Below, piece after piece: positions 9,302-18,154 of a stretch of DNA of 64,000 nucleotides. Position numbers and translations under genes: made by a program. The first letter of the stretch is position 1. Each line of letters begins with the position of its first letter. The DNA lies in IMG/VR virus record IMGVR_UViG_3300025869_002060, positions 124,001 to 188,000 of that record; one strand, written 5' to 3'. A model generated the notes under the pieces. It was not told the DNA's origin, made no database searches, and saw only the letters and a list, made by a program, of their open reading frames with translations.

Positions 9302-9895
9302 TTGAAAATTAAAAAGAAGATAATACTTACAGATGCAGATGGTGTATTGCTTAACTGGGAATATGCTTTTAACGTCTGGATGGACCAACATGGCTTTGAA
9401 GAATTGCCTGATGCAAAGTTTAATTATGATATGGGAGAACGATACGGTATTCCTAAATCGCAGGTTGCAAAGCTAGTCAGGATATTCAATGAGAGTGCCG
9501 CAATAGGCTTCTTACCAGCATTTAGAGATGCAATGTATTATGTGAAACGTTTACACGAAGAACATGGATACGAGTTTCATTGTATTACGAGTTTGAGTTT
9601 AGATGCTAATGCTTACAAGTTACGTAAAATGAATTTAGATAAATTGTTTGGCGAAGGTGCATTTACCAAACTGATCTGTTTAGATACTGGTGCTCCAAAG
9701 GACGAAGCATTATCTAAATACAAAGACAGCGAAATGTGGTGGCTTGAAGATAAGCCCGAGAATGCAGAAGCAGGTATTGCACAAGGACTAAAGCCTGTAC
9801 TGTTTGAGCATGGCCATAATATGAATTACCGCAATGACTTGATACCAATCGTAGATAGCTGGAAACAGTTTTATAAACTTGTTACCAAGAAGTAG
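9302..9895 (+). CDS. HAD-family 5'(3')-deoxyribonucleotidase
   Basis: ILTDADGVL motif I, CITS motif II, WWLEDKPEN motif IV. Confidence 0.8.
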   Translation: MKIKKKIILTDADGVLLNWEYAFNVWMDQHGFEELPDAKFNYDMGERYGIPKSQVAKLVRIFNESAAIGFLPAFRDAMYYVKRLHEEHGYEFHCITSLSLDANAYKLRKMNLDKLFGEGAFTKLICLDTGAPKDEALSKYKDSEMWWLEDKPENAEAGIAQGLKPVLFEHGHNMNYRNDLIPIVDSWKQFYKLVTKK

Positions 9896-9916
9896 TGTTC
9901 TATAACAGAACACTAC
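9892..9916. terminator. Hairpin between convergent genes
   Basis: GTAGTGTTCT-ATAAC-AGAACACTAC perfect 10-bp stem; no clear U-tract. Confidence 0.5.
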
Positions 9917-9935
9917 CTCCTCCTATGCTACATTA

Positions 9936-10697
9936 TCACAGATCTTTATAAAGTCTAAGAATCTCTGTTACGGCTGGATCACGTTGAATATCTGTACCTG
10001 TAAATTCTACTCCTGTAATATGGTCTAGTTTTCCATAATTGTCAACTAAACGTTTAAAATCTAATAGACCGTTCTCAGGATCTTTGCGATCCGCTTGTCT
10101 GGTATCTCCAGTGACAACAATCTTACTTCTTTCGCCTAAGCGGGTCAACAACATTTTCATTTGACCTGGGGTCGCGTTTTGCATTTCGTCTGCAATAATA
10201 TAGCTATTCTTAAATGTTCGACCTCGCATAAAAGCTAGTGGGGATATTTCCAATACAGAATCTTCTAGCATTTTATTGATTTGGGCTTTCGTGTAGTATT
10301 CTTGAATATAATCAAAAATTGGTCTAGTCCATGGAGCCATTTTTTCATTTAAGTCTCCTGGTAGGAACCCATGTTTCTCATCATCAACTCCCACAGCCGG
10401 GCGAGTAACTACGATTTTATTAAATTCTCCTTCTCGTAATAATTTTAGGGCTGTAATCACGGCAAGCATTGTTTTACCAGTGCCTGCTGGTCCTGTTGCA
10501 AAAACAATCTTGTTTGTTTCCGATTCTAACATATCTATATATGTTTCTTGTTTAAGACTTTTAGGAATAAGTGTGATTTTAGTCTTCTTTTGACGGTATC
10601 TGTCAAAATCAACTACATTCTGATCGAATGCTGGATGCTGATAGTTTTGTTTGGATTCGCGTTGTTTACGAGCGAGTGCTCTCTTTTTTCTAGACAA
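9936..10697 (-). CDS. phoH: PhoH-family ATPase
   Basis: GPAGTGKT, TRPAV, GFLPGDLNEKMAPW, FMRGRTF, IADEMQN, LTRLGERSK, GDTRQAD; TTG start with AGGAGG SD. Confidence 0.97.
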   Translation of the reverse strand: MSRKKRALARKQRESKQNYQHPAFDQNVVDFDRYRQKKTKITLIPKSLKQETYIDMLESETNKIVFATGPAGTGKTMLAVITALKLLREGEFNKIVVTRPAVGVDDEKHGFLPGDLNEKMAPWTRPIFDYIQEYYTKAQINKMLEDSVLEISPLAFMRGRTFKNSYIIADEMQNATPGQMKMLLTRLGERSKIVVTGDTRQADRKDPENGLLDFKRLVDNYGKLDHITGVEFTGTDIQRDPAVTEILRLYKDL

Positions 10698-10700
10698 TTT

Positions 10701-10802
10701 GTTAGCCTCCTATGCTTGTTATGGTGTCCACAGCTAGGAATCTTACATTGGTTGCTAAACTTATACGTGGACGTTAACAACCAGTGTAAGGTCTGTGTCC
10801 AC
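10701..10802 (-). ncRNA. Putative structured cis-regulatory leader of phoH
   Basis: 13-bp stem 10742-10754/10778-10790 (one mismatch on the mRNA strand), loop GUCCAC complementary to two GUGGAC copies, and an anti-SD hairpin; see findings. Confidence 0.55.
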
Positions 10803-10929
10803 TATTAATATTTAAACCTATGACATCAATCATAAAGTGTACATTTAAGATTGACCTTATCGAAGCTAATTATATGCCACATAAGATTTGTCCAAAGGTA
10901 AATACACTAAACAACAGAAGGTGCCCAAG

Positions 10930-11490
10930 ATGTCATCAGCCGCAGTATTACACGACATTATAGATAACGTCAAAAACATATATCAAAATTCAAGTAGTAT
11001 TAGTACACTTATGGATTTTGAACGTGTACTTGATACTCTTGACTTATATAGTTTTAAAAATTGGCAATCAGGTGAAATTGTTGAAGGTCCTATCTTTGAA
11101 AAGTATTTTGTTACTGTTACATTAATGTTTCCATATAGAAAAATGCCCGACCCCGACGGAGCACAACGTTTATTAGATTATGATTGTCATGTAAGATTTC
11201 GCAGGAGTGAACTTGAATCACCAGTTCAAGTTAAAGGTCCTGAAGATTACGAAGGTGGCACAAAGTATCCTAAAATGGAACGTTATCCAATTTGGTTAGT
11301 TGAAATTGTTATGACAAAATCATTGATGTCAGAAATTTCACGTGGTAGTGTTGAAATACAAGGTGATCAAATCAATGTTGAAGAATTAGAATCTGCTTAT
11401 GAACAAGGCGCTGACGAACAAGAGGTGTCAGGTGACGTTGTAGCAGACAATGATGCAACAGGTGACGAAGTAGGGAGTGAAGTAGCATAA
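10930..11490 (+). CDS. Conserved jumbo-phage hypothetical protein
   Basis: MDFERVLDTLDLYSFKNW...MPDPDGAQRL; ATG 10930 preferred because TAAATA at 10899 lies inside the track start. Confidence 0.75.
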   Translation: MSSAAVLHDIIDNVKNIYQNSSSISTLMDFERVLDTLDLYSFKNWQSGEIVEGPIFEKYFVTVTLMFPYRKMPDPDGAQRLLDYDCHVRFRRSELESPVQVKGPEDYEGGTKYPKMERYPIWLVEIVMTKSLMSEISRGSVEIQGDQINVEELESAYEQGADEQEVSGDVVADNDATGDEVGSEVA

Positions 11491-15847: not shown

Positions 15848-18154
15848 ATGATACAAACCAATCCAGAGATTGAAAACATTGTACAACTAGCCACAAACTA
15901 TGCGGCAACAAATCAACACGAATATGTAACACTAGAGCATCTACTTTATGCTATTTGCAGTTATAAACCTTTTTATGATTTGTTAGAAATACAAAACACT
16001 GACACAGATGGTTTACTTGCAGACATTGATCATTATGTAAAAGCACAAGCACATCTTGTACCCAAGGAAATGAAGAAAGAAATCATTCCACGTAAAACAC
16101 ATGCACTTGAAAGAGTATTTAATCGTAGTTTTACACAGGTACTTTTCAGTGGACGTAGTCATGTACAAGTAATAGATTTGTTTCTGAGCATTGGACAAGA
16201 AAATAATAGCCATGCTGTTTATTTTATGGTCAAGTATGGTATAAATCGTGGAGAACTAGTTGACTTGTACAATGAACGCTGGAGTGGAATTACTACAAGA
16301 CAAGTAATGGCAGAAAGTCAAGCGGATCATGTATTAGCAGAGTTTTGTGATAACTTAAACAAACAAGCAGTTGATGGCAAAATTGATCCAGTTATTGGCA
16401 GAGATTTTGAGATTGAAGAAATTACCGAAGTACTAGCAAAACGTAACAAAAGTAATATATTAATGGTGGGCGATCCTGGTGTAGGTAAGACTGCTATTGC
16501 AGAAGGACTTGCTAAAAAGATTGTCGATAAGCAAGTGCCAGATTACTTGATTGACTTTACAGTATGGAATTTAGATATTAGTACATTACTTGCTGGAAGT
16601 AAGTATCGTGGAGAATTTGAAGAAAAACTACAAACAGTTATTAAAGCATTAAAAGCCAAGAAGAAAGTTATCCTGTTTATTGATGAAGCACACCAAATGC
16701 GTGGTGCTGGAGCAGGAAGCGGAAGCAGTGTTGACTTCTCTAATATGATTAAGCCAGCTATTAGTAAAGGTGAAATTAAAGTTGTTGCAAGTACAACATG
16801 GGAAGAATACAGCGAATCATTTGAAAAAGATCGTGCATTAATGCGTAGATTTTATCGTATGACAATTGAAGAACCTACGTCAGATGTAACAAAAGACATA
16901 CTACGTGGATTAAAGCCTTATTTTGAGGAGTTCCATAACGGTGAAATACATGACGATGCATTGGTTGCCGCAGTGGATCTAAGTGTGAGGTATCAAACTG
17001 ATAAGAAGTTGCCGGACAAAGCTATTGATTTAATTGACACAGCCTCAGCAAAAGTTAAACTTAAAAGAAGTAATTTTGTATTGCAACGCAAAGATATTAT
17101 TGAAGCAGTTAGCAAGGCAACTAAAATTCCAGTCGACCAACTAGGAACCGATCAAGGCAGTGTTGGTATTAGTAAACTTGAAGATCATATTAAGAGCAAA
17201 CTATTTGGTCAAGATCAAGTGGTTGATACATTGTTAGAAACTATCTATGTTAGCAAAGCCGGACTTAAAGCAATTAACAAGCCAATTGGTAGTTTTTTGT
17301 TTATTGGTCCTACAGGCACAGGTAAAACTGAACTAGCCAAATTAATAAGCGAACACATGAATATGAAATTGCTTAGATATGATATGAGTGAATACCAAGA
17401 GAAACACTCTGCCGCAAAACTAATTGGTGCACCTCCGGGTTATGTTGGGTATGATGATGCAAATCTTGGAGGAGGGTTATTAGTATCTGATATTGAGAAG
17501 AATCCTAACTGTATTATATTGTTTGACGAAATTGAAAAAGCACATAGAGATGTTAGTAATGTATTATTAGGATTATTAGATGAAGGTTCAGTTACTAGTT
17601 CAAATGGTAAGAAAGCAGACGCTCGTAATGCTATTATTATATTAACTTCAAACCTTGGAGCAACTGCTGGAGATCAGAATGCCATTGGCCTTGGTAGAGA
17701 TTTTGAAAAAGTTGGAGAAGACGATAAGGCTGTTAAACAATTCTTCAAACCTGAATTTAGAAACAGACTTGATGGAGTATGTAAGTTTAATAAACTTGAA
17801 ACAATGGCAATTAAAAAGATTATTTGCAAGTTTATCACTGAACTAAATGAATTACTTGTTGAGAAAGATCTAAAAATCCGTTTAACAGAAGAAGCAATTA
17901 AACATATTGCTGATGTTGGCTACGATCCTAAGATGGGAGCAAGACCATTACAGCGAACAATTAACAATCTTATTAAAATTCCGCTAAGTAAAAAGTTAAT
18001 ATTTGAATCAGTAGAGCCTAATCATATAATTATAGTTGATTACGTTAATGACGAGATTATTTTTAACGTTAAGTCTACAGAAGTAGACTTTGACCAACCT
18101 AAAGTGAACAACGATGGATACATCATACTGGATCAGTTTAAACCAAAAAGTTAA
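15848..18154 (+). CDS. clpA: ClpA-like Hsp100 ATPase
   Basis: Clp N-domain, two AAA+ modules (GDPGVGKT, FIDEAH; GPTGTGKT, LFDEIEK), IGL loop (NAIGLG), GARPL; no ClpB middle domain. Confidence 0.93.
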   Translation: MIQTNPEIENIVQLATNYAATNQHEYVTLEHLLYAICSYKPFYDLLEIQNTDTDGLLADIDHYVKAQAHLVPKEMKKEIIPRKTHALERVFNRSFTQVLFSGRSHVQVIDLFLSIGQENNSHAVYFMVKYGINRGELVDLYNERWSGITTRQVMAESQADHVLAEFCDNLNKQAVDGKIDPVIGRDFEIEEITEVLAKRNKSNILMVGDPGVGKTAIAEGLAKKIVDKQVPDYLIDFTVWNLDISTLLAGSKYRGEFEEKLQTVIKALKAKKKVILFIDEAHQMRGAGAGSGSSVDFSNMIKPAISKGEIKVVASTTWEEYSESFEKDRALMRRFYRMTIEEPTSDVTKDILRGLKPYFEEFHNGEIHDDALVAAVDLSVRYQTDKKLPDKAIDLIDTASAKVKLKRSNFVLQRKDIIEAVSKATKIPVDQLGTDQGSVGISKLEDHIKSKLFGQDQVVDTLLETIYVSKAGLKAINKPIGSFLFIGPTGTGKTELAKLISEHMNMKLLRYDMSEYQEKHSAAKLIGAPPGYVGYDDANLGGGLLVSDIEKNPNCIILFDEIEKAHRDVSNVLLGLLDEGSVTSSNGKKADARNAIIILTSNLGATAGDQNAIGLGRDFEKVGEDDKAVKQFFKPEFRNRLDGVCKFNKLETMAIKKIICKFITELNELLVEKDLKIRLTEEAIKHIADVGYDPKMGARPLQRTINNLIKIPLSKKLIFESVEPNHIIIVDYVNDEIIFNVKSTEVDFDQPKVNNDGYIILDQFKPKS

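What the first reader, a model, noticed from the sequence alone, without database searches (positions are those of the whole stretch)
10701..10814. Switch-like structured RNA leader on phoH with two competing GUGGAC partners and an anti-SD hairpin
Seen on the minus strand, between a TAAATA motif (10814-10809) and the TTG start (10697). A 5' GUGGAC (10802-10797) precedes a 13-bp stem (10790-10778 with 10754-10742; one A-C mismatch on the mRNA strand, which is a G-U pair on the plus strand). The loop of that stem carries GUCCAC (10772-10767). A second GUGGAC (10731-10726) lies inside a hairpin in which UCCUAGCU (10739-10732) pairs with AGC(A)UAGGA and so covers the AGGAGG Shine-Dalgarno. Inference: the loop GUCCAC can pair upstream (SD stays sequestered, OFF) or downstream (anti-SD hairpin destabilised, ON). 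This would be a pseudoknot-based translational switch. Established: some PhoH-family proteins are RNA-binding ATPases, so autoregulation is a plausible trigger.
Basis: partly seen in the sequence, partly recalled or inferred. Interest (0 to 1): 0.65.

Follow-up and report, generated by a model that had tools for sequence, protein, structure and literature searches.

The report
Conserved structured leader on phage phoH
The stretch is the late promoter and 5' untranslated leader of a marine jumbo phage's phoH gene, and it folds into a phoH-specific RNA structure, kept across related phages, in which the very first bases of the mRNA can pair with a hairpin loop or with a strand next to the ribosome-binding site.

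Summary
The window lies in a 228-kb marine jumbo phage of the T4 superfamily (Atu_ph07/Rak2-like). TAAATA is its late-promoter core: 81 sense versus 21 antisense copies upstream of genes, 153 of 160 phoH relatives carry it, and gp55-type sigma occurs in 5 of 5 large relatives. GUGGAC therefore starts at about +1.

Three features are conserved:
- The long hairpin P2.
- GUCCAC displayed in the P2 loop. Several lineages keep this layout with unrelated stem sequences (7 of 20 leader clusters; 1.8 expected).
- A distal strand complementary to the 5' end, forming helix P1 (p 0.002-0.04 per lineage).

It is the window's version of the P1 strand (CUGUGUC in relatives). The anti-SD hairpin is weakly conserved, and the ribosome-site opening energy is only the genome median.

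Models suggest that when the 5' end pairs with the loop the ribosome site is closed (about 8 kcal/mol), and when it pairs in P1 the site is open (about 3 kcal/mol). So a switch is plausible but with different partners, no known trigger and no mapped transcript start. There is no Rfam match, and the genome holds a single copy.

The parts
10809..10814 (-). TAAATA, core of a T4-type (gp55-class) late promoter for phoH
   Evidence: Within 160 nt upstream of gene starts in the genome there are 81 sense versus 21 antisense copies. An exact TAAATA lies 32-117 nt upstream of phoH in 153 of 160 related loci. A gp55-type sigma factor is present in 5 of 5 large relatives. ATAAATA/NATAAATA late promoters have been described in Rak2-like phages and cyanomyoviruses (PMC5259590, PMC2984593).
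10793..10802 (-). 5'-terminal segment GUGGACACAG. GUGGAC (10802-10797) begins at the predicted +1 (A10803 or G10802).
   Evidence: The block GTGGACACA is invariant in the clade alignment. The +1 position is inferred from T4 late-promoter geometry and was not mapped.
10776..10790 (-). 5' arm of the long hairpin P2
   Evidence: Present in the minimum-energy fold and in the RNAalifold consensus. Relatives keep a hairpin at this place with unrelated sequences.
10767..10772 (-). GUCCAC in the P2 loop, complementary to the 5' GUGGAC (pseudoknot-type or alternative pairing)
   Evidence: GTCCAC is invariant. The same loop display occurs in L156, L209, L003/L218, L223, L219 and L090. Co-varying versions occur in L027, L014 and L088.
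10742..10756 (-). 3' arm of P2
   Evidence: The mismatch sits at the same stem position in relatives: C.A in the window, C.U in L156, U.U in L209.
10724..10733 (-). Distal strand CUGUGGACAC, the 3' strand of helix P1 with the 5' end.
   Evidence: Duplex with the 5' end is -13.4 kcal/mol against -5.5 +/- 2.0 for shuffles, p 0.004. The CUGUG core is invariant. P1 appears in the RNAalifold consensus.
10732..10739 (-). UCCUAGCU, 5' arm of the anti-SD hairpin. It overlaps the P1 strand by 2 nt.
   Evidence: Present in the minimum-energy fold. It is loosely kept in L156 (UCCAGUGCU) and L209 (CCCAGCU) but is not significant against shuffles.
10706..10716 (-). AGCAUAGGAGG: 3' arm of the anti-SD hairpin plus the Shine-Dalgarno AGGAGG (10711-10706)
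   Evidence: Invariant in the three nearest lineages.
10691..10697 (-). Start codon UUG and the following UCU A. UGUCUA (10696-10691) is complementary to the 5' UGGACA.
   Evidence: The window's minimum-energy fold pairs these two segments. All 6 GTGGACA-type leaders have UCY-A here, against 24 of 116 other leaders.
9936..10697 (-). phoH coding sequence (253 aa, PhoH-like ATPase without a PIN domain)
   Evidence: PHROG 170, E 3.8e-75. Relatives carry Pfam PF02562.
9887..9921 (-). 16-bp hairpin just after the phoH stop codon, between convergent genes. It is a likely transcript end.
   Evidence: Fold of -29.3 kcal/mol, z -4.2. A 987-nt contig from an RNA library ends at 9911.

Best explanation
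The region is the late promoter plus the roughly 105-nt 5' leader of a monocistronic phoH mRNA of a T4-superfamily jumbo phage. The leader is a phoH-specific cis-acting RNA element. Its mobile part is the mRNA's own 5' end (GUGGACACAG, starting at about +1), which has conserved complementary partners.

Partners of the 5' end:
- GUCCAC, held in the loop of a long hairpin (P2).
- A distal strand just 3' of P2 (CUGUG...), forming helix P1. This strand overlaps the arm that can cover the Shine-Dalgarno.
- In this clade, also the start-codon region (UGUCUA).

Most likely working:
- When the 5' end is taken by the P2 loop (or by the start-codon region), the distal strand is free to close the ribosome-binding site, giving low translation.
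- When the 5' end pairs with the distal strand (P1 stacked under P2), the ribosome-binding site is open.
- In all states the 5' end is base-paired, which should also shield the mRNA from 5'-end-dependent decay.

Shown here: the sequence elements, their conservation and co-variation, their specificity to phoH, and the model energies. Inferred: the transcript start, that the pairings form in vivo, that they alternate rather than coexist, and the effect on translation or stability. The trigger is unknown.
For: Promoter:
- TAAATA is orientation-biased upstream of genes, 81 versus 21.
- It is present upstream of phoH in 153 of 160 relatives.
- gp55-type sigma is found in 5 of 5 large relatives.

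Specificity to phoH:
- In this genome only 18% of other TAAATA leaders start with a hairpin, against 32% of control sites. Among 133 distinct phoH leaders the figure is 68% (76% of those at least 45 nt long; 58 of 89 clusters).
- The covariance model finds one copy in the 228-kb genome.

P2 and loop display:
- The same layout (5' hexamer, then a stem, then the complement of the hexamer in the stem's loop) recurs with unrelated stems. The window has CUUACACUGGUUG, L003 has UUCAGGUUAU, L223 has AAUUCUUAGUAA, L219 has UUGGUUUUAU, L090 has UGUAGUAUU and L004 has UUUUACUG.
- It is found in 7 of 20 conservative leader clusters, against 1.8 +/- 1.1 with shuffled 5' ends and a maximum of 5 in 200 shuffles.
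- Hexamer pairs co-vary: GUGAGC/GUUCAC, GGAUUG/CAGUCC, GACCGU/AUGGUC.
- G.U pairs in P1, P2 and the hexamer helix fit the sense RNA and not the opposite strand or DNA.

P1:
- The duplex between the 5' end and the distal strand beats shuffles in the window (p 0.004), L156 (0.008), L209 (0.010), L003/L218 (0.002-0.006), L219/L220 (0.006-0.012) and L223 (0.038).
- It is in the RNAalifold consensus.
- A natural variant in an RNA-library contig, A7>G (10796), keeps its pair as G.U.

Coupling to the ribosome site:
- Opening energy of -15..+3 is 2.7-6.4 kcal/mol with P1 forced. It is 5.7-9.0 kcal/mol with the 5' and loop hexamers withheld. This holds in all five leaders tested. The genome mean is 5.3 +/- 2.7.

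Recurrent theme:
- More distant phoH leaders show a four-segment layout: a 5' SD-mimic, its local partner, an anti-SD and the true SD.
Against: - No transcript start was mapped. A 987-nt contig from an RNA library runs 83 nt upstream of TAAATA (to 10897), so some RNA may start further upstream. In that case GUGGAC would not be 5'-terminal. The contigs are unstranded and DNA carry-over is not excluded.
- Within the close clade the key blocks are invariant, so there are no compensatory double changes (0 of 26 pairs). The support comes from analogous structures in other lineages and from shuffle tests of my own design, made after looking at the data.
- The anti-SD pairing is not significant. In the unconstrained ensemble the ribosome site is no more closed than the median gene.
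- L004 lacks a significant P1, and for L090 it is not significant (p 0.10). In L003 and L223 the distal strand is not adjacent to the SD arm.
- The loop pairing may be sterically strained. In the window only 6 nt connect the 5' hexamer to a 13-15-bp stem. L090 and L004 have linkers or loops too short for a true pseudoknot.
- The energy models used cannot score pseudoknots.
Confidence: 0.45

Rival explanations
1. Static protective fold, not a switch. The leader adopts one compact structure (P1 plus P2, possibly with the loop contact). Its role is to keep the 5' end base-paired and so stabilise a monocistronic late mRNA against 5'-end-dependent decay. Translation is not regulated.
For: - The most widespread feature in phoH leaders is simply a hairpin starting at about +1.
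- The RNAalifold consensus is P1+P2 with the SD free.
- The ribosome-site opening energy is ordinary, and the anti-SD pairing is not significant.
- In the window clade, nt 1-6 could pair with the loop while nt 6-10 pair with the invariant CUGUG. That would make one continuous helix rather than two alternatives.
Against: - It does not explain why a complement of the 5' hexamer is kept in the loop of a much stronger hairpin in lineages where both cannot form together (L004, L090, L088).
- It does not explain why other late leaders of the same genome lack 5' hairpins.
- It does not explain the switch-like four-segment leaders of distant phoH genes.
Confidence: 0.3
2. Protein operator. The invariant GUGGAC/GUCCAC pair, or the P2 loop, is a binding site for a phage RNA-binding protein that sets phoH translation. 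The protein could be PhoH itself (autoregulation by an RNA-dependent ATPase) or a RegA-like repressor.
For: - The two hexamers are invariant while the P2 stem changes freely, as expected if their sequence is read by a protein.
- PhoH-family proteins act on RNA. PIN-PhoH (PhoH2) proteins couple helicase and RNase activity, and a 2026 preprint reports lineage-specific structured RNAs encoded next to phoH2 genes (bioRxiv 10.64898/2026.10.21.760802).
- T4 gene 32 mRNA is a precedent for a leader pseudoknot used in autoregulation (own knowledge).
Against: - No binding test was possible.
- In the wider family the hexamers co-vary as a helix (GUAGAU/AUCUAC, GUACAC/GUGUAC and others). This points to pairing rather than sequence readout.
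- The 5' hexamer may be constrained by the promoter's start region.
Confidence: 0.12
3. The loop GUCCAC toggles between the 5' GUGGAC (OFF) and the second GUGGAC inside the anti-SD hairpin (ON).
For: In the window both pairings are perfect 6-mers. The duplex between the loop and the second copy is -11.1 kcal/mol, against -8.1 for the loop with the 5' end.
Against: - The second GUGGAC is absent from all relatives beyond 98% identity. The homologous strand pairs with the 5' end, not with the loop.
- Forcing this pairing in a nested fold costs 6.4 kcal/mol relative to the minimum-energy structure.
Confidence: 0.06
4. DNA-level element or chance. The inverted repeats act as an operator or cruciform in a divergent promoter region, or are fortuitous.
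For: The region lies between two divergent late promoters. The P2 repeat also scores on the opposite strand (25 bits).
Against: - Spacing between the complementary hexamers varies from 5 to over 30 nt among relatives, which does not suit a dimeric DNA binder.
- G.U pairs work only in the sense RNA.
- The fold beats shuffles, and the layout is enriched across lineages.
Confidence: 0.04

Closest known systems
Inhibitory hairpins at T4 translation initiation regions (genes e, soc, 49, I-TevI; review PMC3014915)
   Same: It occurs in a T4-type phage next to a late promoter. An intramolecular helix can cover the Shine-Dalgarno or start codon, and the 5' part of the RNA decides whether it forms.
   Different: In T4 the late promoter lies inside the 5' strand of the inhibitory helix, so late transcripts simply lack it. 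Here TAAATA lies upstream of every arm, so the late transcript carries all segments and would have to choose between pairings.
T4 gene 32 mRNA leader pseudoknot (autoregulation by gp32; own knowledge)
   Same: It is a 5'-proximal pseudoknot-type arrangement in the leader of a T4-family gene whose product binds nucleic acid.
   Different: There is no sequence or size similarity. The gene 32 system relies on cooperative binding to an unstructured A/U-rich tract, which is not evident here. No binding of PhoH has been shown.
5'-terminal stem-loop mRNA stabilisers (for example the E. coli ompA 5' UTR; own knowledge)
   Same: The helix starts within a nucleotide or two of the predicted 5' end, and this is conserved across many phoH leaders.
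   Different: The leader has extra conserved partners (the loop complement and the distal strand) that a simple stabiliser does not need. No half-life data exist.
Structured ncRNAs encoded next to PhoH2 (PIN-PhoH) genes in bacteria (bioRxiv 10.64898/2026.10.21.760802)
   Same: It is a lineage-specific structured RNA lying directly beside a PhoH-family ATPase gene.
   Different: Those RNAs are long (for example 357 nt) and multi-stemmed, occur in bacteria, and sit beside PIN-PhoH fusions. This one is a roughly 105-nt phage mRNA leader beside a 253-aa PhoH without a PIN domain. Homology could not be tested.

Membership tests
Any Rfam 15 family | Match reaching the family's gathering score | tested here: not met
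   cmscan of 10300-11300 on both strands at E up to 10 gave only chance hits of 23 bits or less, none overlapping the leader on the minus strand.
T4-type (gp55) late promoter | TATAAATA-like box about 10 bp upstream of the start | tested here: met
   TTTAAATA at 10816-10809. The TAAATA core is exact in 153 of 160 phoH relatives.
T4-type (gp55) late promoter | Box recurs upstream of many genes in the sense orientation | tested here: met
   81 sense versus 21 antisense copies within 160 nt of gene starts.
T4-type (gp55) late promoter | Phage encodes a gp55-family sigma factor | tested here: inconclusive
   Not found in this 65%-complete record. Found in 5 of 5 large relatives (phrog_12791, E 1e-76 to 1e-83).
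T4-type (gp55) late promoter | Mapped 5' end a few bases downstream of the box | tested here: inconclusive
   Only assembled contigs of RNA libraries were available. One runs from 9911 to 10897, past the box.
5'-terminal stem-loop mRNA stabiliser | Helix begins within about 2 nt of the 5' end | tested here: met
   In every predicted state the pairing starts at nt 1-2 of the predicted transcript. This depends on the inferred start.
5'-terminal stem-loop mRNA stabiliser | Lengthens mRNA half-life | not testable with these tools
   Needs decay measurements.
T4 e/soc/49/I-TevI type RBS-sequestering hairpin | SD or start codon lies in a helix | tested here: inconclusive
   Present in the minimum-energy fold. 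However, the opening energy of 4.75 kcal/mol is the genome median, and the arm is not better than shuffles.
T4 e/soc/49/I-TevI type RBS-sequestering hairpin | Late promoter lies within the 5' strand of the inhibitory helix | tested here: not met
   TAAATA (10814-10809) lies upstream of all helix arms.
H-type pseudoknot leader | Two helices in the order A-B-A'-B' | tested here: met
   The order is GUGGAC, P2 5' arm, GUCCAC, P2 3' arm. The same order recurs in other lineages.
H-type pseudoknot leader | Both helices form at the same time | not testable with these tools
   The folding tools are nested-only. Linker lengths make it plausible in L223 and doubtful in L090 and L004.
PhoH2-associated structured ncRNA | Neighbouring gene encodes a PIN plus PhoH fusion | tested here: not met
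   P0001 is 253 aa with PhoH/AAA domains only.
PhoH2-associated structured ncRNA | Sequence or structure homology to the described clusters | not testable with these tools
Metabolite riboswitch | Conserved unpaired nucleotides forming a ligand pocket | tested here: not met
   The only invariant blocks are helix-forming strands, the SD and the start. Loops and junctions vary freely.

The most novel reading that the evidence does not exclude
phoH genes of marine T4-superfamily phages carry a family of leader riboregulators in which the mRNA's own 5' end is the moving part. It toggles between a hairpin loop and a strand next to the ribosome site. The PhoH ATPase itself remodels this RNA, giving a helicase-RNA feedback pair parallel to the structured RNAs recently seen beside bacterial phoH2 genes. 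That would give the first functional handle on phage PhoH, one of the most common viral 'auxiliary' genes of unknown role.
Probability: 0.12. Interest if true: 0.8.

Novelty: new variant of a known kind. Interest (0 to 1): 0.55.

Why it matters
phoH is among the most widespread phage-borne genes in the ocean and is used as a viral marker, yet neither its function nor its control is known. This phage occurs in marine samples from at least 14 studies. A gene-specific leader RNA kept across many phage lineages says that phoH dosage or timing is under post-transcriptional control. It also offers a small, testable RNA of about 105 nt, with obvious compensatory mutants, for learning what the signal is. 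If the protein acts on its own leader, the leader would also be the first candidate natural substrate of a phage PhoH.

Tried and rejected
- **Rfam at permissive threshold:** nothing.
- **blastn of the region against GenBank phages:** no match.
- **Pattern scan of viral contigs** for TAAATA-GTGGAC-GTTGTT: only copies of the same phage plus chance hits inside genes.
- **5' hairpin as a general property of late transcripts:** rejected. Other TAAATA leaders of this genome are not enriched.
- **Second TAAATA+GTGGAC site** (genome 62702, minus strand): no ORF follows, so it is chance.
- **T4 gp55 and gp45** as single-protein and family queries on this record: no hit. The record is only 65% complete.
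- **Covariance model of the clade:** recovers only its own members and L003 weakly (E 0.05), so it cannot reach the analogous leaders.
- **RNA-library contigs for the transcript start:** uninformative, because they are unstranded assemblies. X14 covers the whole region evenly.
- **Anti-SD hairpin as a conserved, unusually strong occlusion:** not supported.
- **First clustering of leaders by single linkage:** collapsed to 3 clusters and was discarded. It was redone against cluster representatives.
- **Sigma-70-type reading of TAAATA:** the scan found no sigma-70 promoter there. The best sigma-70-like site on the minus strand lies at 10986-10957, inside the neighbouring gene.

Full report
**1. 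What is in the sequence**

- TAAATA at 10814-10809.
- GUGGAC at 10802-10797.
- A 13-bp stem, 10790-10778 with 10754-10742, with one C.A mismatch. It can extend by U.G and U-A.
- GUCCAC at 10772-10767, in the loop of that stem.
- A second GUGGAC at 10731-10726.
- UCCUAGCU at 10739-10732, able to pair with AGC(A)UAGGA across the AGGAGG Shine-Dalgarno.
- A TTG start at 10697.

The ORF is a 253-aa PhoH-like ATPase (PHROG 170, E 4e-75). The 125-nt RNA folds to -32.3 kcal/mol against -22.5 +/- 3.6 for shuffles (z -2.72, 0 of 200 as good). The minimum-energy structure contains both the long stem and the anti-SD hairpin. No Rfam family matches.

**2. Setting**

- The window is part of a 228-kb viral record that is 65% complete.
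- Its DNA polymerase is 50% identical to that of Sinorhizobium phage Phosso and 46% to Agrobacterium phage Atu_ph07. It is therefore a jumbo phage of the T4 superfamily.
- It is a marine phage, seen in runs from 14 studies.
- phoH is a lone minus-strand gene. Its upstream neighbour is a divergent virion-protein gene (ATG 10930).
- A 16-bp hairpin follows the phoH stop codon (9887-9921, z -4.2). The gene therefore looks monocistronic.

**3. TAAATA is the late promoter, so GUGGAC is the 5' end**

- Within 160 nt upstream of gene starts, TAAATA occurs 81 times in the sense orientation and 21 times in antisense. The divergent neighbour has its own copy at 10899-10904.
- Of 160 loci encoding phoH relatives from viral and metagenome contigs, 153 have an exact TAAATA 32-117 nt before the start. 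The rest have TAAGTA-like variants.
- All five large relatives tested encode a gp55-type late sigma factor (E 1e-76 to 1e-83). None was found in this incomplete record.
- ATAAATA and NATAAATA late promoters are described for Rak2-like phages and cyanomyoviruses (PMC5259590, PMC2984593).
- In T4 the box is centred near -10 (own knowledge). That puts +1 at A10803 or G10802, so the RNA begins (A)GUGGAC.
- The start was not mapped. The only RNA data are assembled, unstranded contigs. One 987-nt contig covers 9911-10897, which is phoH plus the leader plus 83 nt upstream of the box. It may reflect an upstream start, overlapping transcripts or DNA carry-over.

**4. The structure is specific to phoH**

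- In this genome, leaders behind other TAAATA boxes are not enriched for a 5' hairpin: 18% have one, against 32% at control TAAATA sites. The phoH leader ranks second of 68.
- Among 133 distinct phoH leaders from relatives, 68% start with a hairpin of -5 kcal/mol or better (76% of those at least 45 nt long). This holds for 58 of 89 sequence clusters.
- The helix co-varies freely: GUGGAC/GUCCAC, GUAGAU/AUCUAC, GUACACC/GGUGUAC, GUGAAC/GUUCAC and others.
- A covariance model of the clade finds a single copy in the 228-kb genome.

**5. What the nearest relatives keep**

Closer relatives were fetched through the protein word search and contig look-ups.

| Relative (protein identity) | What the leader shows |
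|---|---|
| 98% variant | Differs only by one loop base |
| 83% (L156, L209) | Keeps GUGGACACAG, the long stem with its mismatch at the same position (C.A, C.U, U.U), and GUCCAC in the loop |
| 74% (L003/L218) | Same layout, unrelated 10-bp stem |
| L223 | 12-bp unrelated stem with loop UGUCCACC |
| L219-L222 | 14-bp stem with loop AGUCCACC or AGUCCGCC |
| L090 | 9-bp stem with loop AGUCCACGGAG |
| L004/L005 | 8-bp stem with loop AUCCA |

In other lineages the 5' hexamer and the loop hexamer change together: GUGAGC/GUUCAC in L027, GGAUUG/CAGUCC in L014 and GACCGU/AUGGUC in L088.

I tested how often a 6-nt complement of a leader's own 5' end lies in the loop of a hairpin of at least 7 bp. It does so in 14 of 79 leaders, falling in 7 of 20 conservative clusters. 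With shuffled 5' ends the expectation is 1.8 +/- 1.1 clusters, and the maximum in 200 shuffles was 5. The test was designed after seeing the pattern, so the figure shows enrichment and is not a formal probability.

**6. The second GUGGAC is a derived form of another helix**

- In the clade alignment the invariant blocks are TAAATATT, GTGGACACA, GGTT.TT, GTCCAC, CTGTG, AGGAGGCT and TTGTCT.
- At the place of the window's CUGUGGACAC, the relatives have CUGUGUUUGC, CUGUGUCUUC or CUGUGUCUGC.
- These strands pair with the 5' end (helix P1), with up to three G.U pairs. G.U pairs fit only the sense RNA.
- In the window, P1 reads GUG-GA-CACAG with CUGUG-GA-CAC, which is 8 pairs around a tandem G.A.

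The duplex between the 5' end and the distal strand beats shuffles of the distal region in most lineages:

| Lineage | p versus shuffles |
|---|---|
| Window | 0.004 |
| L156 | 0.008 |
| L209 | 0.010 |
| L003/L218 | 0.002-0.006 |
| L219/L220 | 0.006-0.012 |
| L223 | 0.038 |
| L090 | 0.10 |
| L004 | 0.47 |

RNAalifold on the clade returns P1 plus P2 as the consensus. Because the sequences are so close, it finds no compensatory double changes. A natural variant at 10796 (A7 to G) keeps its pair as G.U.

**7. The anti-SD hairpin is the weakest part**

- Its 5' arm is loosely kept: UCCUAGCU, UCCAGUGCU, CCCAGCU.
- It is not better than shuffles (p 0.09 in the window, 0.06-0.96 elsewhere).
- The opening energy of -15..+3 in the free ensemble is 4.75 kcal/mol. 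That ranks 75th of 152 genes in this genome.

**8. Energetics and coupling**

For the window:

| State | Energy (kcal/mol) |
|---|---|
| Minimum-energy fold: 5' UGGACA on the start-codon region UGUCUA, plus P2, plus the anti-SD hairpin | -32.3 |
| P1 plus P2 | -30.6 |
| 5' and loop hexamers left free | -29.7, plus up to -8.1 for their duplex |

The ribosome-site opening energy depends on the partner of the 5' end:

| Leader | With P1 forced (kcal/mol) | With 5' and loop hexamers withheld (kcal/mol) |
|---|---|---|
| Window | 2.7 | 8.1 |
| L156 | 3.1 | 8.0 |
| L209 | 2.7 | 5.7 |
| L218 | 6.4 | 8.7 |
| L003 | 6.4 | 9.0 |

In the models, then, the partner of the 5' end moves the ribosome site from the open to the closed end of the genome's range (mean 5.3 +/- 2.7). 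All six GTGGACA-type leaders also keep UCY-A after the start codon, against 24 of 116 other leaders. This preserves complementarity of the 5' end to the start region, although shared ancestry may explain it.

**9. A recurring theme**

More distant phoH leaders (ATG starts) show four segments:
- A 5' SD-like GGAGGGC followed by an AUG.
- A local partner for that segment.
- An internal GUCCUC.
- The true SD, GAGGAC.

Their minimum-energy folds split between '1:2 plus 3:4' and '1:3'. This is the same logic as proposed here and suggests that control of phoH translation by the leader's 5' segment evolved repeatedly.

**10. Reading and limits**

- I read the element as a phoH-specific cis-regulatory leader whose 5' end changes partners. 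I put the chance of that specific mechanism at about 0.45. That it is a conserved functional RNA structure of some kind I hold at about 0.75.
- A static protective fold is the main rival. Protein recognition, by PhoH or another factor, may be added to either model.
- The trigger is unknown. Because loops and junctions vary freely, a metabolite-binding pocket is unlikely.
- The nearest known systems are the T4 initiation-region hairpins (PMC3014915), the T4 gene 32 leader pseudoknot, 5' stem-loop stabilisers, and the structured RNAs recently reported beside bacterial phoH2 genes. It is a member of none of them.

Noticed in passing
window 10899-10904 (+), gene start 10930: The divergent virion-protein gene (PHROG 12928) has its own TAAATA box 31 nt before its ATG. 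The 230-bp spacer therefore holds two back-to-back late promoters. The block GTTTAGTGTATTTA is also kept in relatives.
   Followed up: partly
window 10986-10957 (-): A sigma-70-like promoter (TTGATA, 18 nt, TATAAT; 11 of 12 matches) points toward phoH from inside the neighbour's first codons. Together with the RNA-library contig reaching 10897, it raises the possibility of an earlier, longer phoH transcript.
   Followed up: partly
L004, L005, L007-L014, L018, L228, L231-L234, about 70-80 nt upstream of their TAAATA; window 10877-10862 (CATATAATTAGCTTCG) may be the counterpart: A second conserved motif, GCTTAATACTTA, lies upstream of phoH in many relatives, whatever the orientation of the upstream gene. 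Its role is unknown. It could be an early or middle promoter, or a late box (TAAGTATTA) read on the other strand.
   Followed up: no
L024, L028, L033, L034, L039, L135, L137, L140, L145 and others, leaders of phoH: Distant phoH leaders begin with GAAAGGAGGGC followed by an AUG a few bases on. This looks like a possible upstream mini-ORF that runs into phoH out of frame. They also hold an internal GUCCUC that can pair either with this SD-like segment or with the true SD.
   Followed up: partly
window 9887-9921: A perfect 16-bp hairpin lies between the convergent ends of phoH and the + strand gene 9302-9895 (z -4.2). It has no clean U-run on either strand. An RNA-library contig ends inside it (9911).
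   Followed up: partly
window 10893-10888 (-): A third copy of UGGACA lies upstream of the late promoter. In a longer transcript it would pair with the start-codon region. It is not conserved in L156 or L209.
   Followed up: partly
P2 stem, window 10784 with 10748: The single mismatch in the long stem stays a mismatch at the same position in relatives, but with different bases: C.A, C.U, U.U. This suggests a kept weak point or recognition site rather than drift.
   Followed up: no
window 15848-18154 (+): A 768-aa Lon-like ATP-dependent protease (PHROG 4871, E 7e-237) is encoded a few kb downstream of phoH.
   Followed up: no
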